A stretch of DNA of 64,000 nt from Vitrella brassicaformis CCMP3155 (lineage: Eukaryota > Protista > Chromerida): NCBI GenBank assembly GCA_001179505.1, contig CDMY01000234.1, forward strand, positions 62,001 through 126,000, given 5' to 3'. Shown piece by piece: positions 16,729 through 45,924 of the stretch. The translations under genes and the position numbers were made by a program. Under the pieces are notes generated by a model. That model did no database searches. It had not been told where the DNA came from and worked only from the letters and a program-made list of their open reading frames with translations. The first letter of the stretch is position 1. The number at the start of each line of letters is the position of its first letter.

Positions 16729-19290
16729 TTATTGTCTATCGTCGGACGAGTGCATGAGCGCTGTCCGCCCTATCGCCTCGCCGGCGATCCACCCCGTCGT
16801 CCATGCACTCTGCAAGTTGTAGCCGCCTGTGATGCCGTCCACATCCACAAACTCACCTGCAAAGTACAGCTGAACACACACGCGACAGACGACACACCAA
16901 CACGTCCATCCATCCATCCATCCATAGTGTGTAGTGCTTGGCTTTGTACATTCGGCAGTATTTTGCTCTCCATGGTCTTCCAGTTGATGTCGCGGCACCT
17001 GATGCCGCCACTGGTAGTGAACTCTTCTTTGAATGCGCCCTTGCCGACCACTCTCATCCGATGAGCCACCAGCCGCTCAGCCAACCTGCACCCACAGAGA
17101 CATGCTGTGTGTTCGTGCGGGGCGTGAAGGGGCTCTTCCACCATACTTACCCTCTGAGCTTCGCTTTGGACACATCAGCCCATCGCATGGTCGGGGGGAT
17201 GTCGCTCACTTCAAGCAGCACTCGCCACAGACGGCGGGGGATCGGCACCTGGGAAGGCACACACACCTTTCACCTTTCGACTCGGTCAGGCACCTGCGTG
17301 TCTTTTGTCGGCTTACATTCTGCAGAGGGCAGAAAGTGCCCAGTGCCTTCATGGTCAGCTCATCCTTTGCGACCATAAGTTGCGGCAGCACCTGGTCTCC
17401 ACTCTTGAAGGCCCCCCCGGTCCAGTTAATGGTCACTGCACACTCATAGGCCGACTGCACACACAGCAGTGCCACCGGTTCATCTCGGCTTGACATGGAC
17501 GGCCTTCGCGCACCTCACCTCATGCAAATGCCTCGCGGCGAAGGCTGACAGTCTCAGCGTGACAGGCCCGGAGAGCCCAGGTCCTTGTGTGATGAGCATC
17601 GGCCCTTCGTCGACCAACTTCACACTGCCCCCACCACTCTTCCCCCTTCTTCCACCACCCTCTCTGTGCGACACAACGTCAAGTCGCATTCGCACGCTCT
17701 GTATCCAAAGATAAGACATGCACGCACGCCGTACCATCCTCCCTCCCTCACTCACTGCACCTGCATCGAAATCCCTGCGCACTGCTCCAGCAGGGACGTC
17801 TCGGCGTCGTCCTTGGCCAGCCTCAGCGTGAAGAGCGAGGGCACAGGTGGGATCACATGATGCCCGAGACCCTCAACGACCGACCAGAGCGGCCGCGACG
17901 AGCCGCATGCGACCAGCAGGGACGACGGCGCCACTTGCAGATCTGAGGAGGACGAGCGCTTGACCGCTATGGACCACTGGCCGTCCTCCTCAGATCTCTC
18001 CATGTTGGTGACCTTGTGCTTGGTGTAGAGCTCCACTTTCTGCTGCCGGGCGGCTGACAGCCTGAATGACACGCAGTAGGCACACCACAGGCAGGCACTT
18101 CTGCATGAGGGGGTGGTAAGGTATGGCGTGGCGTTGCTTACAGGCAGCTGATGATTGTCTCCGACTTGTCAGTGGTCGGAAACACACGGCCATCGGCTTC
18201 GGTCTTCAGTGACACACCCCTGAGGCCACACCCACCCATGCGCAACCATTAAGGAAGGAGAGCAACGGGCATATCCCCCCCCCCCCCNNNNNNNNNNNNN
18301 NNNNNNNNNNNNNNNNNNNNNNNNNNNNNNNNNNNNNNNNNNNNNNNNNNNNNNNNNNNNNNNNNNNNNNNNNNNNNNNNNNNNNNNNNNNNNNNNNNNN
18401 NNNNNNNNNNNNNNNNNNNNNNNNNNNNNNNNNNNNNNNNNNNNNNNNNNNNNNNNNNNNNNNNNNNNNNNNNNNNNNNNNNNNNNNNNNNNNNNNNNNN
18501 NNNNNNNNNNNNNNNNNNNNNNNNNNNNNNNNNNNNNNNNNNNNNNNNNNNNNNNNNNNNNNNNNNNNNNNNNNNNNNNNNNNNNNNATCCCCCCCCCCC
18601 CCGCCGTCCTCCCCACCTGTCAGTGAACCATTGGTGTGTGTCTGCTGGCGAGAATCGCTGACAACGAACGAGAGAAGAAAGAAGGACAGGGTGTGCAGCC
18701 GATGGGTCCACCTTTGTTGACCCTCCCTGGCTCACATGCAGCGGGCCGAGCAGCTCACGGCTACCACGAGGGTAGCCTACCTACCCACACACAGATGCAG
18801 ATGTCTGATGAGTGAGTGAGTCAAGACCACACCTTCCCTAAGCGGCGCGACGTGTCGTCACTGTTTTTACCCTTGGCAATGTCACTAATGGTCTTCTGTG
18901 GGTCTTGCTGCGCGTTGCACCTCCCACCGCCGCTGATCCGGACCTTCGGCAGCATCTCAGGGCCCGCCTCGAACACCATCACCTGAAGAGGCGTATGACA
19001 GACAACGCATCAATGCATAGATTCCCACATGTGTATGCTTCTTCTGAGGCTGTTTGCTGATCTCACCCCACCCTGCATCTGTCGCCGGCGACTTGCTTTG
19101 CCCGGATGGCCGCAAACACCCCAGCGGCTCCCCCGCCGACAACCGCAACCAAGTGAGGATCTGCCGATGTGGCGGTGTTCCTCGCTCGGAGAGCAGTCCA
19201 TCGACAGCTGCATCGACGTGAGAGGCGATGGATGAATGCAGATGCATCGCTGAGTAGGAGGAGAGTCAGGACAAGCAGGCATGACGTCAT
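16729..19290 (-). CDS. HI0933/BaiN-family NAD(P)/FAD-dependent oxidoreductase with bipartite plastid-type leader; crosses gap 18288-18587
   Basis: Leader [26 protein letters not shown]. Motifs [80 protein letters not shown]. Confidence 0.9.
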
Positions 19291-28451: not shown

Positions 28452-31400
28452 ATGGTCAGACCCCGCACACCCACAGCCATCGCCGTCGCCACACACTCCC
28501 TCCTACTCCTACTCTTCTACTGCTTCTTCCCCTGCATCGTCTTCACAGCAGCTGACAGCACCAGCAGCAGCAGCAGCAGCATCGCACAGCCGCAAGACCC
28601 CAGCACACTCTCCCTCAGCCACGCCGCCTTCCCCTCCCCAGGCACCGGCAACAACAATAGCAACACCACCAACAGCAGCAGCAGCACAGAGGCCGCCGCC
28701 GCCAGTGACAGTGACCTCACCGCCATGCCGGCATGGAGGAGGCGGGACCTTCGTCGCGCGGAGCTTGCCGAGAAGCTGTTGCAGGGTGAAGGGCTGCCCA
28801 AGGCCCCTCCCCCTTTCGCCTGGTGCTCGTCTTCTCGCATGACGGCCGCCATCCCCGTCACTCACGACCCGCTGAGTGAGGGGTGGCCGAGAGGGGGGTT
28901 CCGGAACCACACGAACGACCCCAGGTGCCGCGCCACATTTGTGGAGGAGTTCTTCGGCGACGGCCTGGGCAGCAACGAGTCGATGAGGGACAGCCGGCGG
29001 CACGCTTTGATGGCGTCGGTGGCCTATGGTGAGTGCGGGACCAGGAGGAGTGAGACGGGCAAGTACGTGTACCACAGCAATGTGATGCGCGTGCCGGGGG
29101 CCGAGAACAACGCGGTCGTCACCTGTGCGTGCGCAAAGACCAACGGGACGACCAACGACACGACGGCAAAGGGGAGGGGGAACGGCACACACGGAGAGGG
29201 GGAGGGGGAGGGCGATGGGGAGGGTGGTGGGAATGCCACCTCGGCCATGGGTGGGGAGTGTGTGGCGACGGCCAAGTGGGAACACACGTCGGGGTCCAAG
29301 GTGGCTCACAAGAGCAAGGAGCTGCTGACGCGCGAGTGGACGGCAATCGGGTGAGTCAGTGAGTGAGTCGTGGCGCAAACACAAACACAGCCCCCAGGCG
29401 TCACCTGCCATCGGTGTCATGATGTCCATCGATTTGTTATGTCTGTCCTGTCAGAAGCGGCCACCTGCTGTCTGCCGAGGTGGTCGCGGGACCCAACCTC
29501 ACCTTATCGGTCAACAACAAGGACGAGTAAGCCAGCCAACAAAACACACCTACCAGAGACCATGTGTGGTGTTTGCCGTCCTGCGTTCAGCGGTTTTGTG
29601 TTTGAGTCCTGGATAGCGGGCAGCCCCGGCCACCCCTGGCCGATGCTCTGCGACCTCGTGTGTCCTGACGGCCCATCGGAGGCTAACCCCGGGTGCGTCC
29701 ACCACCTCATCGTCAACGGCTGCCCCGCCGACCGGCTCCGACACGCCACATCCAACAACACCCCGCCGTTGTTTACGGTCATCTCGCAGTCTCGCGGGCA
29801 CATTGTCTTCTCGCTGAGGCCTGCCAGCTTCCCCAAGGGCAACAGCAAGGACAAGGACAAGGGCAAGGGCGAGGGCAAGGATGTCCGGTATAATTACCGC
29901 GTCCAGTGCATGATGGCCGTCTTCCCGAGGCAGCCATCGGTTGACGAGCAGTGCGAGCTCGGCCGCAAGTACGGGCAGTGGCGCAGGAGGCGGCTGCAGG
30001 AGGGGGGCCAGAGCCATGGCGGTCACACTCCTTCTGCTGAGAGGGGCAGCTGGGGCGATGACGGCCATAACGGTGGAGAGGGCAGCAAGCCGGCGGTGTC
30101 GCCGGGGATGGTGGGAGAGGTGGAGGGGCAGATCGTCAGCCCCCCCATCAGCCTCAACCCCCTTCAACCTTTCCCCTTCAACGCCAACACGCCCGAGGAC
30201 TTATTCAGCGGTCAGTCAGTACACAAGCAAGCGCACCCACAGAGAGCCGCGGACACTGAATGAATGAGACTTGTGTGTGTGGAATGTGTGTGACAGAGAT
30301 CGCGAACGAGATTATATGGGACAACTGGTCCATCAACTGGGGCAGGGACTTCCTCAACCGCGAGACGTCGGTGCAGGTGGGCAACGACGTCGCCTTCGTC
30401 GGTATCGGCATCGACACACTCGTCAGGGAACAACTGGTCGGTCAGCAAACATACGAGCGACTCGAGCCACCCACCCCACCTGGCTGCATGCATCCTCCAT
30501 CCCTTGTGCGTGCGTGCGTGTTGTGTGGATTGGCTTGCAGGTGAACGTCGGGTATGGGAAGACGACTGTGACGGTCTCGACGGACGAGCAGGACCTGGAG
30601 GGCGGTGTGGGCGTCATGGTCGGCTCCTACGGCGTCAGGGTAAGTCTATCAGCGACAGCACCACGACCAAGCTTGACACAAGTCGACATGCGTGTGAGTC
30701 TGATTGACATATTGGTTTGATAGGTTGATGCCGACCTTGACGACCGGCAATATGCGATCGAGGCGGTGGCCCGCGGCACGGAGGTCGGCGCCAACATCGA
30801 CAAGCTCGACAGGGACTACGGCGTCCGAGTCAAGGTACTCACCCACTGCCGCCAGCTCACGCCACATCACGCCACCACACCCACGTCGTCTGTAACTTCC
30901 TGCGCAGGTGCGTAGCACCGAGGTGACAGTCCGTCACGACTTTTTCGACGTGCAAGACATTTCGACCAACGACGACGAGGAGCTGGCGACTGAGGTGTTT
31001 GTGGGGTACAAGAGCACGGGCGTCGCCATCGGGTCGGACGTCGACGACACCGAGTACGGCGTCAGCGTCGGCACACTCGGCTACCAGTTCTCGGTGCTCA
31101 GGGACTTCGACGAGCGACAGACAGACTTCCAGGGCAACTGGGGGGACGGCTACCAGCTTGTCCTGAACGGTCGGAGGATCGATGCCCTGTCTGGGTCTGT
31201 GTGACGGCGATGCTTGATGCGTGGCCGTGTGTGTGTGATATGCCTGCAGGCGATTTCCCTGACCCGGCAGACACGGAGGTCTTCGTGCAGGTGGGATTCG
31301 GCGTACTCGGCACCACATACGTCCAGGTCAGCACACAAACAGAGAGCGAGAGAGAGAGAGAGAGAGAGAGACACTGCCGGCCATCTCTCTCTCTCCGTGT

Positions 31401-31630
31401 GTGTGTCCGTCGATTGTCAGGTGGGTGCTGGTGTGGGAGGCGATGGCATTCCCCAGGGCAGCGCCGAAGTCGAGACAGACGACGTGTCCTTCGGCGTCGA
31501 CTTCATCGACGACCTGGGCGAGCGCTTCTTCCTCTTCGGACTCACCGTCGGCAAGTTCACATACACGTGGGAGTCCGAGGTCATCCCCGACAATCTTCAG
31601 ATTCCTCTCATCCTTGGGGCACTGGGGTAG
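28452..31630 (+). CDS. Secreted protein: signal peptide + ZP-N-like + ZP-C-like domains + RRRR site + acidic Gly-rich beta-hairpin repeat domain
   Basis: Hydrophobic leader LLLLLFYCFFPCIVFTA. ZP-N-like Cys pattern CSSSRMTAAIP / NDPRCRAT / GECGTRR..VYHSN / VVTCAC. ZP-C-like LCDLVC..LIVNGCPAD..IVFSL..F..YRVQC. Then QWRRRRLQE and a multi-exon beta-strand-rich tail ending IPLILGALG*. Confidence 0.7.
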
Positions 31631-32713
31631 CCAGAGAGGNNNNNNNNNNNNNNNNNNNNNNNNNNNNNNNNNNNNNNNNNNNNNNNNNNNNNNNNNNNNN
31701 NNNNNNNNNNNNNNNNNNNNNNNNNNNNNNNNNNNNNNNNNNNNNNNNNNNNNNNNNNNNNNNNNNNNNNNNNNNNNNNNNNNNNNNNNNNNNNNNNNNN
31801 NNNNNNNNNNNNNNNNNNNNNNNNNNNNNNNNNNNNNNNNNNNNNNNNNNNNNNNNNNNNNNNNNNNNNNNNNNNNNNNNNNNNNNNNNNNNNNNNNNNN
31901 NNNNNNNNNNNNNNNNNNNNNNNNNNNNNNNNNNNNNNNGGGGGCGGATTGGCGAATTGCAAAAGCATTTTTGCGTGATTTGGAAGGGGGAGAGTGATGG
32001 CACACCGGCGGGCGGCATCATGATCACACACATCCATGCGATGTGTGAAGTGACCCCATGAGATGGATGAGGGCAATGTGGCTCTCTGTTCCGCCTGTGG
32101 CCACCGCCGTCAGTTTTCAAGGGCTGCGTGCTGCGTGTTCTTACACTTACATGACATGCGCTGCATGCACGACGCAGATGGATGGATGGATGCATGGATG
32201 GACAGACTACTGCCTCTCGCGTGTCCGTCTGGGTGTGTGTCGGTGCCGCTTTTGCTCCATGGATGGATGGATGGATGGTGAGTGACGCTCAAAGGTTTGA
32301 TGGATGGATGGATGAAGCAACGAGCCACGCGTGGTGGCTGCGGATTTGTTGGCTGCTAATTGAGAAGTGACAACAAGCACTGCATGGCACTGTCTGTCTG
32401 GCCAATCTGGATGAGATCGGTCTGTCTCCTCGCCCCCTGCGTGTGCGCGTCCGTCTTGTCTGTCTGTGCGTCATGGTGTACACGACACCCACCCTGCACT
32501 CTGGTGGGTGTGTGTATCCGGTCTATCTACTCACAAGCACACGCAGCCCCCTCCCCTTGAACCCTTGACCCCTCCCCCTCCTGCACGGCACACGCGGGCA
32601 GCGAGGAGTTGGCCCTCAAGACAGACAGACAGACAGACAACCAGAGAGAGAGAGAGAGCCGGAGGCGGCTGTGTTTTGCATTTATATACCTCGGGAAAGA
32701 GCTCACCTCTGCC

Positions 32714-33388: not shown

Positions 33389-36300
33389 TCAGTGTCTTCG
33401 CGGCGATGGCCCCGGCGACCTCCCGGCCGTCCGCCGGGGAGACGTCTTGCGCCTGCACGGACGGATCGAATGCACACACAACGAGTGCATGACATAGAAG
33501 TGGATGTACTCAGTGGAAGGCTCTCTTCCCTACTTGGCGTTGTAGAAGGCGAGGGCATCGGGGTGCTGTGTCTCCAGCCGAGACGCCTCCATCATATCAA
33601 ACTGCACAAACACAATGAATGCACCCACAACAATGCACCTCCATGCACTGCAGGCACTCCGTCCGCCTTACCTGTTCGTTTTCGTCGAGGTCGTCCCCCT
33701 CCGGCCCTCTGGTGGACGATGAGAGGGTCTTGGCCGCTGAGGCGACCGCGTCAGCACCACTCACCAATTGGCCGTACTTCTCCTCATACCTGGGGCCACA
33801 GGCCATCGATCATGTTGGTGGGATTGGGCAGAGGGGTGGGAGGGCATGCACTGAGTGCATTACCATCGCTCGAAGGCCTGCAGCAACTGTGTCTTGCACT
33901 TCTGAATGTTGTGGTCGATCTGGAGCAGGTGTGCCTTGAGCTCCTTGTGGGCGTCGAACTGCTCGCGATACTGCTTCTTGAGGTCTTTCAGGCGCTTGAT
34001 GAGGGCGTACTCTTCCTCGTCGATCAGAGACACCGACGAATCGCCGCCCACCTGCATGTCGTTGATTGCATGAGCCATGTGGATGGGCTGAAGGCATGCA
34101 TGTGAGACATATATGTGGCCACCCACCTTTGCGCCCTCTGCGCTGCGCTCCCTCTGTTTCTTCTGGACCATTTCTTTCACCTCCTCCATTGAAACCTTCA
34201 CACGGCTTATCTCCTGCACACATCCAGTATAGCCACAGTAGTGGTGTTTGTATTTTCTTGTCTGTCTTTCTCTCACCTCAGCGACTGTCCTGAGCTCTTG
34301 TTTCTTGGTCCGCTGATCGATCTTGTTCTGGTTGAACGCCGCCTCCAGCTGTTGCCCCTCCTCTGTGCTGGCCTTGAAGTCAGTAAAGGCCGTCTGCCGG
34401 TCCGGCGGGGCGGGGCCGGCCTGCGCGTCCCCCCTCTGCTCACCAGCAACACCATCAGGGCTGCGACGCTTGCCCGCCGCCCTGAGGCAAACGAGAAATG
34501 ATCGGATTCCATGTCTCTGTCCAGATCTCCTACCTTGCTTCCTGGTCGATTGCCCCTCCCTCCAGCCCCGCCCCTTTGGCTCTCTTGGACTGGTCGGCGG
34601 CCACACCCACAGACAACCCCGCAGCCGCCTCCTCATCGCCCACACCCTCATCCGCACCCCCCGCGCCCTCGGCTGCCGGCTGACCGCCCTCGGCTACATC
34701 ACCCTCGGCACCTGCTCCTGGCGCCTGTGAGGGGTGTGCGCGTGCTGGTCTGGACTGGAGTGCCTGCTGCTGGTTCTGGTAGAGCCGACGCATCGACTGG
34801 AATAGCTCACGAACCTGCCTATGGGAAGGAAGGAGAAAGGGAAAGGGGAGACGGGGCAGAATGATCTGGATGGGTGTTGTTGGTTGATCTGTAACACGCA
34901 TACTTGATGGACGTGATATCCACGTCTGCCACTTCGCCCTCAAAGTACTGCTCGGCGGCCTTCTCGATCTCGCGCTGCTCCTCGGGCGTATACGGCTCAT
35001 ACGACTGCACGGACCATCAAGACACAGACAGATAAGACACGACCATCCGCCCTCCACACGCAATGACCTATCCAGAAAATACCATCTGGCTGCGTCCGCT
35101 GAGGATGTCGTGCATGGCGAGCTCCTGCTTGAGATCCCTGATTTCTCTCTCGTACTTGCGGATGAGCTGCTGGCTGTCCAGCTGGATGTTTTGCGTCGCC
35201 TCGTTCGAGACACGCATCATGCGTGTGGCAAACCGGAGCGTACTCACTGTCTCCTCGACGTGCGACCCCTCCGGCCAGATGTTGGCGATCATCATGGTGC
35301 GGCAGTTGCCACCAATCGAGTCTTTCAGCAGGTGGGTGAGCTTCGACGAGCGGTAGGGCACATGGTCGCGACGCTTGTCCGAGAGAGCGACAACCACCTA
35401 CACCAACACACACAAATAAATGACGGCTGACTGTGCTGTGGCCCCCCAACTCACAAATCAGTCACCTGCTCCAGAAAGGTGAGGCTCTTGTTGATGAATG
35501 TCGCCTCTTTCAGCGTCGCCCCGAACGATCCCGTCTTCTTCAATCTTTCGCTGCCAGCGAGGTCCACCAGATGGATCTTGGAATAGACCACCCTCTCATT
35601 CGACTCCACTCGCGACCGGCTCTCCACAAACAGGGTCACCACAAAGTGACTCCGGCTCGACAGCACGTTCAACGAATGCTCCGACACCGCCCGCGCCGCG
35701 TCGGCCTCGAAGAAAGCCTGGAGACACTCCTCCTCTGTCAATGCTACCCTTCTCGTCAGGCCCTTGACGCTCACACCGCCCTTGCTGTCCTCCTGGATCT
35801 GCTGATCGGCCGCAGTGTCGCCGGCAGAGGGGTAGGGGAGGAGGTCCATCATGAGCTCGTTGTAGATCTCGAGGGCGCCCAGTCGGACGGTGATGGCGCA
35901 TTCTGGGCGTGCGGCGATTGCGGTGAAGAGGGCGGTGATGCAGCGGGGGATGATGCCGCGGTATGCGAAGTTGGCGGGGCCCCCCACCATGGTGAAGGTC
36001 TTGCCTGCAACGATGAGACATACCTTGCACACAGACTCTGTCTCACTCAGTGACTGGCTGACCAGCCCCTGTCTGTCCGTATGCCATGCAGGTGCCATTG
36101 AAGCCGTCGAGCACACCGGTGCCGCCAGTGCCCAGCAGCTCCCTCGCAAACTCATCAAACACCCTCTCCTGCACTCCACACCACACACCACACACCATAC
36201 ACAAGCAAAGAAACAAACAAACAAGCAAGCAGCATCACGCACCTGAGAACAAGCAAGCTGAGCCTCTCACCTGTGAGGCGTTGTGGAGGACCCGGTCAAA

Positions 36301-36549
36301 CTTGAACGAGAAGCTGTCCACTTGGTTGTTGACCGTTCCCCCAACATCGCTCTTAGGCAGCTTGACGTCAATCGCCTGGACCAATCAAATGACACCAAAC
36401 ACACACAGGCGGCAAAATACAAGCGACCTGCTGCGTTTGTTTGTCTGCCTGTCGCCCACATTGGTGTCCTCGTGGATGCGGAATGTCTGCTCTGCAAAGC
36501 GTCCGGTGGGGCGAGTGCGCACCACTACACGAACGTGTTTGCTCGGCAT
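33389..36549 (-). CDS. KIF9: Kinesin-9 family motor (KIF9-like)
   Basis: VRVVVRTRP, NNQVDSFSFKFDRVLHNASQ, P-loop AYGQTGAG|KT split by an intron, LEIYNE, SSRSH, LVDLAGSER, INKSLTFLEQ, HVPYRSSKLTHLLKDSIGGNC, ETVSTLRFA; coiled-coil tail. Confidence 0.92.
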
Positions 36550-36883
36550 GATTGAATCTCTGTCACATGCGCTATGAGAGTGTATGCGTGTTTGGAACGT
36601 GAGGAGGGGGCGTGGGGGCGAGACTCCATTGGCAAGCTCGCAACAACAAATCGGGAAGAAAGGCACAAGGGCGTCTTTGTATGTTCAAATCGTGCGAGCG
36701 CGTAAGGATTGGTTGGGGTGATGGGCGTTAGGAGAGATCTCTCAGTTCTCTTGCTCCTCTCTGTCTTGTGGTGTGGCTCAGTGTTTCAGAGGCGAGCCCG
36801 AGGAAGTTGCACCCCCCGCCGCCACCAAGGAAGAGGCTCCCGCCACCGCTGACACCACCGCACCTGCAACAGCCAAGAAGAAA

Positions 36884-38178: not shown

Positions 38179-39169
38179 GTCAAGCCGAGAGGTTCCAACG
38201 AGGGAAGACAGACAGGTGTACGCTCAAGCACGCACCACGTACGGACCGATGGGCGCGTGAGCTGAGCAGCTGCGAGTTGCGTGTGTGTTTCATCAAGGAC
38301 TTTTTATTGGCCGACTGTCTGTGAGTTTGCCTCTGTTCTCTGGTGAGGTTTTGAGTGGCAAAGGCGTCAGTCATCGTCTCTGAGGAGCTCCTCCTGCTTT
38401 CGCCAGCTGCATCGTTGGTCGCTTTCCGTCTGCAGTGCAGCAGATGGGCGTCTCGCGACGTTGCAGTGGGTCGAAAACAAGGGTGCGCCCGACCAAACAG
38501 ACAGACCGCCACCACTTTCCATGGAGGACTTTTATGTCAATCCATGTATGTGTGTGCATGCGTCCATACTTGTCTTTGTGAGGGAGAGAGTGAGCGAGAT
38601 CACTCAGGCGGGCAGTTGTCTGACGAAGGCATCCATCCATGCGTTGTCTTTCTCTTCTGTATCGTTTTTTCCATCGATCGTGATCATGCATGGCATGTAT
38701 CCAACGATCCATCGACGCACGCCATCATGTCTGTCTTTTTTTGACACACACAGACACACACAGACACACACAGACACACACAGACACACACAGACATATA
38801 CGTATATGTACGTATGCATTCATATGGCTGTTTTTTTGTCCGCTGGTTTTTCTCACACCTACGACAATCACACACCTGCGACCAGGCAGCAGAGCAGGAG
38901 CGATTGTGAGCATCTTAGTTGCTCACTTGCAAACTGGCTGAGGTGTAAGGCCACGCGTGTTGTCTTTGATTTCTGTCTCCATGATGGGATCAAGGATGGG
39001 CACCATGTCGCTTTCGCCAGGTAGCCTGCGATAGGCGGGCCAGGTTTTGACAGACTTGAGTGGGATGAGACGATATATGATGCATTGCAAGGCTTGAACC
39101 TTCCTCATCACTGGAGCCTGTGAAGTGTCCACCTCTCCGATGCGACACATGGGGAGAGGAGCCCTCCCC

Positions 39170-40600
39170 CCATGCCTCCCCCTCATCGTTGCAACCCAAT
39201 AGCCTTCATGCCCGCTAGAGACACCAGCAGTGTGAAGGAAATTTTTGCGACACACGGCAGCAGGCCAAAAGGTGCGGGGGGAGGAAGTTGCAAGCTCGCA
39301 AGCTCGCAAGCTCGCATGGGAGGGGCCATTCCGGTCTTCCCCCCATGCCTTCCCCTCATCGTTGCAACCCAATAGCCTTCATGCCCACCAGAGACCAGCA
39401 GTTTGAAACAAATTTTTTGCGACACACGGCAGCAAGCCAAAAGGTCGGGGGAGAGGAAGTTGCAAGCTTGAAGCTCGCATGAGGGGGGCATTCCGGTCTT
39501 CCCCCCATGCCTCCCCCTCATCGTTGCAGCCTAATAGCCTTCATGCACGCCAGAGACACCAGCGATTTGAAGTAAATTTTTGCGACACACGGCAGCAGAT
39601 CACACGTGGGGAGGAGAGGTGCGGAGACACACGGCTGCAGGCCAAAGGGGGAGGGGCGAGAATGCCTCGGGATGGAGTTAGTAACGAATCGCGCGTGAAA
39701 CACAATATCCCCCCCATTTTTTCAAAGTGAGGCCCACCCCTTCCCCCTGCCTCTCCCTCATCGCTGGAGCCAACAGAACCTTCATGCACGCCAGAGACAC
39801 CAGCGATTTGAAGTAGGATTTTTGCGACACACGGCAGCAGATCACACGTAAGGAGGAGAGGTGCGGAGACACACGGCTGCAGGCCAAAGGGGGAGGGGCG
39901 AGAATGCTTCGGGATGGAGTTAGTAACGAATCGCGCGTGAAACACAATATCCCCCCCATTTTTTCAAAGTGAGGCCCACCCCTCCCTCCTGCCTCTCCCT
40001 CATCGCTGGAGCCAACAGAACCTTCATGCACGCCAGAGACACCAGCGATTTGAAGTAGATTTTGCGACACACGGCAGCAGATCACACGTAGGAAGGAGAG
40101 GTGCGGAGACACACGGCTGCAGGCCAAAGGAGGAGGGGCGAGAATGCCTCGGGATGGAGTTAGTAACGAATCGCGCGTGAAACACAATATCCCCCCCATT
40201 TTTTCAAAGTGAGGCCCACCCCTCCCCCCTGCCTCTCCCTCATCGCTGCAGCCAACAGAACCTTCATGCACGCCAGAGTCACCAGCAGTTTGAAGTATTT
40301 TTTGCGACACACGGCAGCAGGCAAGAAGAGGGGATCAGGAGCTCTTTTCTCGCGAGCTCGCAGAATTCAACGGGGCGCGCGGGCCATTCCGGCCCTCTCC
40401 CTCATCGCTGCAGCCTATATAGCCTTCATGCCCGCCAGAGACACCAGCGATTTGAAGTAGGATTTTTGCGACACACGGCAGTAGCCCAAAAGGGGGTTTC
40501 AAGAGAAGCTGCGACACACGGCTGCAGGCCAAAGGGGGGCAGGGAGAATCCCTCGGATGGAGTTAGTGACGAATCGCGCGTCAAACACAATATATCCATC
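39170..40600. repeat. Higher-order tandem repeat (satellite) of related ~162-173 bp and ~240 bp units
   Basis: Head CCTCATCG(T/C)TG... at about 39181, 39354, 39516, 39756, 39998, 40238, 40400 (spacings 173, 162, 240, 242, 240, 162). Every unit carries TTTTGCGACACACGGC. Confidence 0.9.
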
Positions 40601-42230: not shown

Positions 42231-43560
42231 GAGATTGCTCCAGCACCCCCTGATGGGCTGATCACTAATGGCGATGCTGCCAGTGCGAGGGGCCGGGGGA
42301 CAGGGAGGGGGCGGGGAGCTGGGACACACCTGAGCTACGAGGGGGAGGATTGAGGTGTGCGAGAGTGTGGCCTCGCCTGCTTTTTTCGGCGGTTCCTCCC
42401 GTGTGGTTCCATGCGGTTGACGTTTGTGGTTGCATTTTTGTCGATACCCAGACTGACACATGCTTTTCGTGAATGAGTGACTGACTGACTGGTTCAGGCC
42501 AATCTTCTTGGCGTGTCTCCCCTTGATGCCTCCACGCATTCACACAGCCGGTCATTCACACCAACTACACAATGATGTGACCGGCCGCAATGATGTGCGT
42601 CGGTGTCTGCTGTGAGTTGGACATTACGTTGCAATAGGCGCGATTTGTGAGCCAAAGCTGAGCGCACGGCCCTGAGTGTGCGGCATTGTTGGGTCCCTGC
42701 AGTCAGAAGGCTTGCATCGATGGAATGCGTCCGGATGGCGCTGCGCCGGTCGGGTCACGTCGATAGAGGGCGCTGGGGCCCTCGTTGCGTGTTGCTACAG
42801 TAAGTATCGCTTAAAGCAATCACCGCATAAACCAATCATTTCTGTAAAGCAATCACCCCGCCCCGATCACTCTGTACACAGTCAAAATGCATCGCATAAA
42901 CCAATCACCTCCCAAAGAGACTGAAATCAGCCATTCGGGCCGACCATTCATGGCTCAAAATGACAGCCAGAAAATGAAGCACCACTCTGTGAAAGAGCGG
43001 ACCGATGAAACAGTCGATGAACGGAGAAATACAGACATTTTGATGGTCATCCACCGAGATGAACCATTTTCGATGATGATTTCCGACGAGAGAATCACAA
43101 TGTAAACGGAAGAGCATTCTGTCACTCGCGCAGCAATGACGGCGCCACTGTGACGATCAACCGAGTCAATCGAGTCATTCAATGCATCCGATGACATCTA
43201 CCCAGCCGCACACACGTTTGAGCGACAAAGAGTGAGCAGCACGCCTTCTCCCCACGCGAGNNNNNNNNNNNNNNNNNNNNNNNNNNNNNNNNNNNNNNNN
43301 NNNNNNNNNNNNNNNNNNNNNNNNNNNNNNNNNNNNNNNNNNNNNNNNNNNNNNNNNNNNNNNNNNNNNNNNNNNNNNNNNNNNNNNNNNNNNNNNNNNN
43401 NNNNNNNNNNNNNNNNNNNNNNNNNNNNNNNNNNNNNNNNNNNNNNNNNNNNNNNNNNNNNNNNNNNNNNNNNNNNNNNNNNNNNNNNNNNNNNNNNNNN
43501 NNNNNNNNNNNNNNNNNNNNNNNNNNNNNNNNNNNNNNNNNNNNNNNNNNNNNNNNNNNN

Positions 43561-45624: not shown

Positions 45625-45924
45625 NNNNNNNNNNNNNNNNNNNNNNNNNNNNNNNNNNNNNNNNNNNNNNNNNNNNNNNNNNNNNNNNNNNNNNNNNNNN
45701 NNNNNNNNNNNNNNNNNNNNNNNNNNNNNNNNNNNNNNNNNNNNNNNNNNNNNNNNNNNNNNNNNNNNNNNNNNNNNNNNNNNNNNNNNNNNNNNNNNNN
45801 NNNNNNNNNNNNNNNNNNNNNNNNNNNNNNNNNNNNNNNNNNNNNNNNNNNNNNNNNNNNNNNNNNNNNNNNNNNNNNNNNNNNNNNNNNNNNNNNNNNN
45901 NNNNNNNNNNNNNNNNNNNNNNNN

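What the first reader, a model, noticed from the sequence alone, without database searches (positions are those of the whole stretch)
28452..30000. Apparent complete zona pellucida (ZP) module in a non-animal (chromerid) secreted protein
Seen: signal peptide, then CSSSRMTAAIP (28824), NDPRCRAT, YGECGTRRSETGKYVYHSNV, VVTCAC (29124); a linker; then LCDLVCPDGPSEANP..HHLIVNGCPAD (~29715), HIVFSLRPASF, YNYRVQC; then RRRR at 29982-29993. Known: ZP-N has four Cys in this order (Cx3M-x-V start, DPxC, CGT..YxN with the conserved Tyr, terminal xC). ZP-C has CxATP..LIxNGCPxD..FxFxxF..YxxC. A furin-type site directly follows the module in animal ZP proteins. ZP modules are generally regarded as metazoan. 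Inference: either horizontal transfer from an animal (chromerids are reef-associated) or a pre-metazoan origin, possibly building a filamentous cyst or cell-wall matrix. The match is by eye from remembered consensus; the last ZP-C Cys is not in its usual place.
Basis: partly seen in the sequence, partly recalled or inferred. Interest (0 to 1): 0.88.

Follow-up and report, generated by a model that had tools for sequence, protein, structure and literature searches.

The report
Egg-coat-type ZP module in alga
An expressed, spliced gene of the alga Vitrella brassicaformis (a relative of malaria parasites) encodes a secreted protein that is predicted to carry both halves of the zona pellucida module, which animals use to build egg coats and which reviews still treat as animal-only.

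Summary
Window 28452-31630 (+) is a nine-exon, RNA-supported gene for an 829-aa Vitrella brassicaformis protein (CEL95635.1).

Its order is: signal peptide, Ser/Asn-rich stretch, ZP-N-like domain, glycosylated linker, ZP-C-like domain, RRRR, then a 300-aa beta-rich domain.

Sequence profiles find no ZP match (Pfam; family HMM against PDB sequences). Four other lines agree on a divergent ZP module:
- An AlphaFold model (low confidence, pLDDT 45) has only ZP-module structures as its best matches, in PDB, Swiss-Prot models, AFDB clusters and a Foldseek-independent search.
- The ZP-N part fits ZP3 at 2.5 A.
- Language-model features assign exon 1 to ZP-N and exon 3 to ZP-C, separately.
- UniProt automatically names two 47-73% identical paralogs "ZP domain-containing protein".

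Recent transfer from an animal is not supported. Identity to animal ZP proteins is about 10%. The family has six Vitrella paralogs plus members in Piridium, Selenidium and an unnamed sample. Its C-terminal domain also occurs in Toxoplasma, Neospora and Besnoitia.

Polymerisation and a wall function are inferred only.

This scan had already noted the same family on other pieces of this genome. No paper in the searched library reports ZP modules in alveolates.

The parts
28452..28553 (+). Start codon and predicted signal peptide (residues 1 to about 34)
   Evidence: This is the only stretch of the 829-aa protein with TM-like hydropathy. The ORF is shown. No formal signal-peptide predictor was run.
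28554..28811 (+). Ser/Thr/Asn-rich low-complexity stretch with three N-glycosylation sequons, then an RRR and a short charged stretch
   Evidence: Translation; sequons and basic runs. It has no Pfam match beyond noise.
28812..29135 (+). ZP-N-like domain (residues about 121-228; Cys125, 159, 195, 225, plus an extra Cys227)
29136..29255 (+). Interdomain linker, Gly/Glu-rich, with four N-glycosylation sequons
   Evidence: Tandem-repeat row 29154-29209; sequons. Its length varies or it is absent in paralogs. pLDDT is below 50.
29256..29969 (+). ZP-C-like domain (residues about 269-450; Cys270, 344, 348, 359, 368, 430, 445). It is split over exon 1 (to 29350), exon 2 (29455-29526) and exon 3 (from 29591).
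   Evidence: The exon-3 piece alone hits PF00100 ZP-C clusters, score 0.89 with 180 shared features. Foldseek matches to whole ZP modules span about 340-350 columns at E 7e-5 to 5e-3, whereas chains holding only ZP-N reach E 0.06 or worse. Swiss-Prot hits align on their annotated ZP modules. The cysteines are conserved.
29351..29454 (+). Intron 1 (104 nt, GT..AG)
   Evidence: The joint is seen in an RNA contig of run X1 and not in the DNA runs.
29527..29590 (+). Intron 2 (64 nt, GT..AG)
   Evidence: The joint is seen in an RNA contig of run X1.
29982..29993 (+). RRRR (residues 455-458), a candidate furin/kexin-type processing site directly after ZP-C
   Evidence: Sequence. An RRRR or RRRRR is conserved at this column in five of the six Vitrella paralogs. 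Other members carry basic clusters further downstream.
30114..30131 (+). GEVEGQ motif (residues 499-504) in the post-RRRR linker; a possible counterpart of the external hydrophobic patch
   Evidence: Conserved as GE(V/I)EGQ in five Vitrella paralogs. It is not modelled as a strand and has pLDDT below 35, so the assignment is only a guess.
30297..31630 (+). Exons 4-9 (30297-30436, 30541-30639, 30724-30834, 30908-31169, 31250-31326, 31421-31630, stop codon included). They encode the C-terminal beta-rich domain (residues about 528-829).
   Evidence: RNA joints. The exon model reproduces P0004 exactly. The domain is shared with Piridium, Selenidium, Besnoitia, Neospora and Toxoplasma TGME49_287490. 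It has no Pfam family.

Best explanation
The region encodes the N-terminal half of a secreted, N-glycosylated Vitrella brassicaformis protein (CEL95635.1, 829 aa). That half contains a highly divergent but complete zona pellucida module: ZP-N with four ordered cysteines, a linker, and ZP-C with the four canonical-position cysteines plus two extra pairs. A polybasic RRRR site follows. Where animal ZP precursors have a membrane anchor, this protein has a 300-aa beta-rich domain that is specific to apicomplexans and their relatives. The gene is native and old in this lineage: it has six paralogs in Vitrella, and ZP-bearing relatives lie on both sides of the chrompodellid/apicomplexan split.

Proposed mechanism, inferred by analogy with uromodulin and ZP3 and not shown here: the precursor travels the secretory pathway. 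A subtilisin/kexin-type protease cuts at RRRR and separates the ZP module from the C-terminal propeptide-like domain. The freed modules then polymerise head-to-tail into extracellular filaments that contribute to the wall or sporangium matrix.

Shown here: gene structure, expression, domain order, cysteine conservation, fold-level similarity and family distribution. Inferred: homology with animal ZP modules (about 0.8), cleavage at RRRR (about 0.5), and polymerisation or a wall role (about 0.4).
For: Gene and expression: RNA-only splice joints, and the exon model equals P0004.

Independent halves: exon 1 hits ZP-N clusters and exon 3 hits ZP-C clusters.

Database naming: paralogs CEM19602.1 (73% identical over the module) and CEM09749.1 carry the UniRef name 'ZP domain-containing protein'.

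Cysteines and the RRRR site are conserved across paralogs.

Native, old family. The tree of the C-terminal domain separates Vitrella + Piridium from the apicomplexan members with support 96/98. The unnamed long-branch sequence P0012 also falls on the Vitrella + Piridium side.
Against: No sequence-profile support was obtained here. Pfam hmmscan at E up to 10 finds neither PF00100 nor PF23344 in the window protein or any paralog. Family HMMs of 5 and 9 sequences find no ZP chain among PDB sequences.

The AlphaFold model is of low confidence: mean pLDDT 44.6, pTM 0.33, from an alignment of five sequences. The tool warns that such models can give meaningless matches.

The single-sequence model of exon 1 gave no significant hit. 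ZP3 ZP-N was rank 6 at E 0.52.

ESM feature scores of 0.87-0.89 are below the tool's 0.9 threshold.

No EHP strand is modelled, and there is no C-terminal TM or GPI-like stretch. Disulfide connectivity, cleavage and polymerisation are untested.
Confidence: 0.78

Rival explanations
1. It is a lineage-specific pair of disulfide-rich Ig-like beta-sandwich domains that only resembles a ZP module, either by convergence or because the predictors lean on the cysteine pattern. It would act as an adhesin or a wall-binding region without ZP-type polymerisation.
Against: Every structural library puts ZP modules first, and almost only ZP modules. The two halves hit the two halves of the module in the right order when searched separately. 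Foldseek E-values are about three orders of magnitude better for chains with both domains than for ZP-N-only chains. A polybasic site sits where animal ZP precursors have theirs. UniProt's automatic rule names two paralogs as ZP-domain proteins. No apicomplexan 6-Cys or SRS fold appears among the hits.
Confidence: 0.17
2. It comes from recent horizontal transfer from a reef animal, or from animal contamination of the assembly.
For: Outside this lineage the module is known from animals. Vitrella was isolated from a coral reef (background knowledge).
Against: Identity to all animal hits is 8-14%, with Acropora no closer than the vertebrates. The gene has eight short GT-AG introns confirmed by RNA. 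It lies on a 159-kb Vitrella contig between native genes. There are six paralogs on different contigs. The module is fused to a domain shared with Toxoplasma, Neospora and Besnoitia. ZP-bearing relatives exist in Piridium, Selenidium and one further sample.
Confidence: 0.02
3. It is a real ZP module that does not polymerise. It would serve as a receptor or ligand-binding ectodomain, as in endoglin or betaglycan, or as a folding and display scaffold for the conserved C-terminal domain, which would be the functional core of the family.
For: The C-terminal domain is the best conserved part and exists without any ZP module in coccidians. The best Swiss-Prot matches are TGFBR3, a non-polymerising ZP protein. 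No EHP is modelled.
Against: The conserved RRRR between ZP-C and the downstream domain fits a release step typical of polymerising ZP precursors. The expansion to six paralogs is in keeping with structural matrix proteins, though this is weak.
Confidence: 0.3

Closest known systems
Animal ZP-module proteins (uromodulin, ZP3, ZP1/ZP2, ZPD, TGFBR3/betaglycan, endoglin, DMBT1, ZPLD1, CUZD1, cuticlins, DYF-7)
   Same: The predicted two-domain ZP-N + ZP-C arrangement. Four ordered cysteines in ZP-N. Cysteines at C5-C8-like positions in ZP-C (my comparison with the uromodulin motif is from memory). A polybasic site right after ZP-C. A signal peptide and N-glycosylation sequons. These proteins are the top hits in all fold libraries.
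   Different: About 10% identity and no Pfam or HMM match. Two extra cysteine pairs (Cys227/270 and Cys344/359 by position). No TM or GPI anchor; a 300-aa beta-rich domain follows instead. No recognisable EHP strand. The host is an alveolate alga, not an animal.
ZP-like domains reported in the choanoflagellate Salpingoeca rosetta (as described in review PMC13361971)
   Same: A non-animal occurrence of ZP-like sequence.
   Different: [quoted passage not shown] Here both halves and the cysteine set are present. The organism lies far outside Holozoa. I did not examine the choanoflagellate sequences.
Vitrella paralogs CEM19602.1 (A0A0G4FWT2) and CEM09749.1 (A0A0G4FAV0), named 'ZP domain-containing protein' in UniRef
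   Same: The same architecture, cysteines, RRRR site and C-terminal domain. They are 73% and 47% identical to the window protein over the module. The window protein is sister to CEM19602.1 in the tree, with support 100/100.
   Different: The window protein is instead named 'Bacterial repeat domain-containing protein' in UniRef, a name my Pfam scan does not reproduce. It has longer low-complexity inserts.
Apicomplexan hypothetical proteins with the same C-terminal domain (Toxoplasma TGME49_287490, Neospora XP_003881505.1, Besnoitia BESB_047400)
   Same: A C-terminal beta-rich domain of about 300 aa, 39% identical to the Vitrella query P0005, E 1e-55.
   Different: Their N-terminal parts have no ZP-like cysteine-rich module. 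Their function is unknown. TGME49_287490 was not found in the held supplements of the hyperLOPIT paper.

Membership tests
ZP module (ZP-N + ZP-C) | Bipartite architecture: a ZP-N Ig-like domain, a linker, then a ZP-C Ig-like domain | tested here: met
   The predicted model's best matches in five libraries are whole ZP modules aligned over both halves. The two halves are also assigned separately by ESM features. Caveat: mean pLDDT is 44.6.
ZP module (ZP-N + ZP-C) | ZP-N fold with four conserved cysteines in order C1..C4 | tested here: met
ZP module (ZP-N + ZP-C) | Disulfide connectivity C1-C4, C2-C3, and C5-C7/C6-C8 or the type II variant | not testable with these tools
This needs mass-spectrometric disulfide mapping or a solved structure.
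ZP module (ZP-N + ZP-C) | ZP-C with conserved cysteines C5-C8 | tested here: met
   Cys348 (VCPDG), Cys368 (NGCP), Cys430 (VQC) and Cys445 (EQC) are conserved family-wide. Exon 3 hits PF00100 clusters. The mapping onto C5-C8 rests on my memory of the uromodulin motif. There is no domain-level superposition above generic Ig folds.
ZP module (ZP-N + ZP-C) | Significant match to the curated family profiles (Pfam PF00100 Zona_pellucida, PF23344 ZP-N) | tested here: not met
   No hit at E up to 10 for the window protein or five relatives. Family HMMs find no ZP chain in PDB sequences. UniRef's name for two paralogs suggests another profile does match them. My inference is that this is PROSITE PS51034; I could not run it.
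ZP module precursor (polymerising type) | Consensus furin-type cleavage site directly after ZP-C | tested here: met
   RRRR at residues 455-458, 10 residues after Cys445. It is conserved in five of six Vitrella paralogs. Cleavage itself was not tested.
ZP module precursor (polymerising type) | Internal and external hydrophobic patches (IHP/EHP) that control polymerisation | tested here: inconclusive
   A conserved GE(V/I)EGQ plus hydrophobic stretch lies about 40 residues after RRRR, but it is modelled as disordered.
ZP module precursor (polymerising type) | C-terminal transmembrane helix or GPI signal | tested here: not met
   There is no hydrophobic window outside the signal peptide. A 300-aa beta-rich domain ends the protein. 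From background knowledge, this feature is common but not universal among ZP proteins.
ZP module precursor (polymerising type) | Assembly into filaments | not testable with these tools
   This needs biochemistry or electron microscopy.
Apicomplexan 6-Cys (s48/45) or SRS domains | Match to PF07422, SAG or SRS profiles or folds | tested here: not met
   No such Pfam hit at E up to 10, and no such structure among the top 50 matches.

The most novel reading that the evidence does not exclude
The ZP polymerisation module is not an animal invention. A complete module was already present in the common ancestor of apicomplexans and chrompodellids, fused to a lineage-specific beta domain that replaces the membrane anchor. 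In Vitrella, and perhaps in gregarine cysts, it would build wall filaments by protease-triggered polymerisation as in egg coats. The module would then be either far older than Metazoa or have crossed between animals and alveolates in deep time.
Probability: 0.4. Interest if true: 0.85.

Novelty: new variant of a known kind. Interest (0 to 1): 0.72.

Why it matters
A 2026 review (PMC13361971) defines the canonical ZP module as a metazoan synapomorphy. A 2026 genome preprint lists it among canonical metazoan extracellular domains that it did not detect in an amoeba. A complete module in an alveolate family with members on both sides of the chrompodellid/apicomplexan split would move the origin of this matrix-building element outside animals, or would document an ancient inter-kingdom transfer. 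It would also give a testable candidate for the unknown protein fabric of chromerid walls and gregarine cysts. It links that candidate to an uncharacterised domain present in Toxoplasma, Neospora and Besnoitia. The gene is expressed, compact and has six paralogs, so cleavage, polymerisation and localisation can be tested directly.

Tried and rejected
1. Pfam hmmscan at E up to 10 on exon pieces, the full window protein and five relatives gave no ZP hit, only noise (New_glue, MTLN, DUF2333).

2. HMMs built from the family alignments A1 (5 sequences) and A3 (9 sequences) were searched against all PDB sequences. Only chance hits came back: an SDR and a Cas9 fragment, E about 0.6.

3. The search for homologous proteins with exon 1 alone found nothing. 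Its length filter excluded the 600-1100-aa family members.

4. A single-sequence AlphaFold model of exon 1 had pLDDT 43.6. Its Foldseek search had no hit below E 0.37. ZP3 ZP-N was rank 6, with the best probability and TM.

5. A profile-profile (hhalign) test against an animal ZP alignment could not be run. No tool call left in the budget returned animal ZP sequences, and I did not type any from memory.

6. The hyperLOPIT supplements held no entry for TGME49_287490, and no paper mentions that gene id.

7. Literature searches for ZP together with Vitrella, alveolates, Symbiodinium or Cryptosporidium returned nothing on alveolate ZP modules. The Symbiodinium hits were papers about animal-host (coral, giant clam) proteins.

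8. The UniRef label 'Bacterial repeat domain' for the window protein was not reproduced by Pfam.

9. The 6-Cys/SRS fold, contamination and recent HGT were each considered and rejected (see rival explanations).
Full report
**What is in the sequence.**
The finding lies in a GC-rich eukaryotic gene on the + strand. From the ATG at 28452, a 300-codon ORF runs to a GT donor at 29351. Contigs from two runs flagged as probable RNA (X1, X2) carry exactly these joints and five more downstream. Two other runs whose contigs are unspliced, and so read as genomic DNA, cover the same stretch (X3, X4) and carry none of them. The full model has nine exons and eight GT-AG introns of 64-104 nt. The stop is at 31628-31630, nine bases before a 300-N assembly gap. 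Its translation is identical to a deposited protein, P0004 = CEL95635.1 / A0A0G4EHH8 of Vitrella brassicaformis CCMP3155, 829 aa.

**Anatomy of the protein.**
- Residues 1 to about 34: the only hydrophobic stretch, a signal peptide.
- Residues 35 to about 120: Ser/Thr/Asn-rich, then a short charged segment.
- Residues about 121-228: a domain with Cys125, 159, 195 and 225 (plus Cys227).
- Residues 229-268: a Gly/Glu-rich linker with several N-glycosylation sequons.
- Residues about 269-450: a second domain with Cys270, 344, 348, 359, 368, 430 and 445.
- Residues 459 to about 527: a linker with a conserved GEVEGQ motif.
- Residues 528-829: a beta-rich acidic domain.

There are twelve N-x-S/T sequons and no C-terminal hydrophobic stretch. 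In fact Cys445 lies 10 residues before RRRR and is conserved in all family members whose sequence covers that region.

**Sequence-profile tests were negative.**
Pfam hmmscan at E up to 10 finds neither Zona_pellucida (PF00100) nor ZP-N (PF23344) in the exon pieces, the whole protein or five relatives. Family HMMs of five and nine sequences find no ZP chain among 177,635 PDB sequences.

**Language-model features.**
The exon-1 piece (28800-29348) and the exon-3 piece (29592-30002) were searched separately in the ESM Atlas.
- The exon-1 piece's ten best family-bearing clusters are all ZP-N or CUT_N, score 0.87.
- The exon-3 piece's best clusters are ZP-C/PF00100, score 0.89 with 180 shared features.

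Each score is below the tool's 0.9 line, and the tool warns that shuffled proteins often reach 0.8. However, two independent pieces landing on the two halves of one module, in the right order, is not what chance gives.

**Predicted fold.**
A single-sequence model of exon 1 was useless: pLDDT 43.6, and no Foldseek hit below E 0.37, although ZP3 ZP-N had the best probability. A model of residues 112-535 built with a five-sequence family alignment is also of low confidence (mean pLDDT 44.6, strands 55-66). Its matches are nevertheless uniform:
- Foldseek against 350,542 PDB chains: the top 15 are all ZP-module structures (uromodulin filaments, ZPD, ZP3/ZP1, ZP3), E 6.9e-5 to 4.8e-3.
- AFDB Swiss-Prot: 29 of the top 30 are ZP-module proteins aligned on their ZP modules, best E 3.9e-6.
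- AFDB fold clusters: the named hits in the top 30 are almost all ZP proteins.
- ESM Atlas shape search: seven of ten rows are ZP families, including a ZP-N cluster at TM 0.59 by the hit.

The ZP-N part superposes on ZP3, ZP1 and ZP2 ZP-N at 2.5-3.1 A over 85-91 residues.

**Database naming.**
Two paralogs carry the UniRef name 'ZP domain-containing protein'. CEM19602.1 is 73% identical to the window protein over the module and CEM09749.1 is 47% identical. I infer, without being able to check, that this comes from UniProt's automatic rule on the PROSITE ZP profile. If so, a sequence profile other than Pfam's does recognise the family. The window protein is instead named 'Bacterial repeat domain-containing protein', which my Pfam scan does not reproduce.

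**The family.**
A phmmer search of the ZP-N region against 1.84 billion representatives found only Vitrella proteins and one Selenidium serpulae (archigregarine) transcript fragment. Searching with the C-terminal domain found these members:
- Six Vitrella paralogs (CEL95635.1, CEM19602.1, CEM09749.1, CEM38220.1, CEL94078.1, CEM06835.1).
- A Piridium sociabile protein with ZP-C plus the C-terminal domain.
- A Selenidium C-terminal fragment.
- An unnamed Logan assembly protein (SRR28036161) with the end of ZP-N, ZP-C and the C-terminal domain.
- Two TSA proteins (GHVT) and two further Logan assembly proteins (P0012, P0013), all without a ZP part.
- Besnoitia, Neospora, Hammondia and Toxoplasma (TGME49_287490) proteins that have the C-terminal domain but no ZP-like part.

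All twelve module cysteines are conserved in the Vitrella paralogs, and RRRR in five of the six. In CEM06835.1, however, C3 is shifted, the Cys359 column is not aligned, and there is no RRRR. A maximum-likelihood tree of the C-terminal domain separates Vitrella + Piridium from Selenidium, GHVT, SRR28036161 and the coccidians with support 96/98. The long-branch sequence P0012, from an unnamed Logan assembly, also falls on the Vitrella + Piridium side. The window protein is sister to CEM19602.1. Because ZP-bearing members occur on both sides of that split, the fusion most likely predates it and the ZP part was lost or replaced in coccidians. This is an inference: the root is only a midpoint, and the Selenidium pieces are fragments.

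**Origin.**
Recent transfer from a reef animal, or contamination, is excluded for practical purposes:
- Identity to animal hits is 8-14%, and the coral Acropora is no closer than the vertebrates.
- The introns are native-type and are spliced in RNA.
- The gene sits between other genes on a 159-kb contig.
- There are six dispersed paralogs.
- The module is fused to an apicomplexan-type domain.

Descent from a pre-metazoan ancestor cannot be told apart from an ancient transfer with the data I could reach.

**Mechanism.**
The proposed mechanism is by analogy with uromodulin and ZP3 (established knowledge). After secretion and glycosylation, a kexin/subtilisin-type protease would cut at RRRR and free the ZP module from the C-terminal part. 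The module would then polymerise into matrix filaments of the wall or sporangium. Only the site's presence and conservation are shown here. No EHP strand is modelled, and the usual membrane anchor is absent. A non-polymerising, receptor-like ZP module remains possible: the best Swiss-Prot hits are TGFBR3. So does a role subordinate to the C-terminal domain, which is better conserved.

**Literature.**
[quoted passage not shown] A 2026 preprint lists ZP among canonical metazoan extracellular domains that it did not detect in an amoeba. No paper in the library combines zona pellucida with Vitrella. Searches with alveolate, Symbiodinium and Cryptosporidium terms returned nothing about alveolate ZP modules. 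The library excludes many subscription papers.

**Earlier notes of this scan.**
After my own tests, I found that other windows of this genome had already been noted and followed up as ZP-module genes. These include paralogs with the same RRRR site and beta-domain architecture, and other architectures such as a subtilase-PAN-ZP fusion and a membrane protein. They agree with my result, but they are AI notes, not independent evidence. This locus is one more member of that family.

**Verdict.**
The ZP reading is supported at about 0.8, at the fold and feature level only. Recent HGT is rejected, and function is inferred. I class it as a new variant of a known kind: a ZP module in a new kingdom-level host with a new C-terminal partner.

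**Compliance with the operators' notes.**

Noticed in passing
window 30297-31630 (+), residues 528-829 of P0004: The C-terminal beta-rich acidic domain has no Pfam family. It is conserved from Vitrella to Toxoplasma (TGME49_287490), Neospora and Besnoitia. The ESM Atlas's own low-confidence model (pTM 0.29) resembles porin- or VDAC-like beta-barrels at TM 0.5-0.6. The sequence shows alternating hydrophobic strands and ends with an F-x-Y-x-W stretch. A signal peptide, passenger and barrel order would recall bacterial autotransporters, but this is only a lead.
   Followed up: partly
P0004 / UniRef100_A0A0G4EHH8 (window gene): UniRef names the window protein 'Bacterial repeat domain-containing protein', while close paralogs are named 'ZP domain-containing protein'. 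My Pfam scan finds no bacterial repeat domain in it at E up to 10, so the public name looks unreliable.
   Followed up: partly
window 31640-31939: A 300-N assembly gap begins nine bases after the stop codon, so the 3' UTR is not assembled. RNA contigs resume at 31994-32611. Three more 300-N gaps lie at 18288-18587, 43261-43560 and 45625-45924.
   Followed up: no
window 31093: The two runs X3 and X4, whose contigs are unspliced and so read as genomic DNA, read C where the window and the RNA contigs have G. This occurs 36 bases from contig ends and at about double depth. It may come from a collapsed paralog or a contig-end artefact inside exon 7.
   Followed up: no
P0002 (CEM06835.1, Vitrella paralog, 1099 aa): This paralog has the third ZP-N cysteine shifted by about five residues. 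It lacks the RRRR site and has a 350-aa low-complexity linker before the C-terminal domain. It may be a non-processed variant.
   Followed up: no
AFDB cluster hit A0A812TC30, residues 392-632: One entry named 'Lztr1 protein' appears among the otherwise ZP-named fold-cluster hits (E 2.1e-4). Its organism is not shown, so it might be another non-animal protein with a ZP-like region.
   Followed up: no
window 33451-33861 and 34000-36600 (- strand): Joints with CT..AC ends in RNA contigs mark a minus-strand gene next door. Further on, minus-strand ORFs (35068-35397, 35451-36242) read like a kinesin motor by eye (SSRSH and LVDLAGSE motifs). The flanks therefore look like ordinary host genes.
   Followed up: no
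window 31341-31371 and 39165-40000: An (AG)n microsatellite sits inside intron 8 of the gene. Tandem repeats of 162 and 242 bp lie about 8 kb downstream.
   Followed up: no
L001 (Logan SRR28036161 contig, 2195 nt), gene 277-2133: An uninterrupted ORF in an unnamed public sample encodes the end of ZP-N, ZP-C and the C-terminal domain. It groups with the GHVT and Selenidium side of the tree. The organism is unknown, possibly a gregarine.
   Followed up: partly
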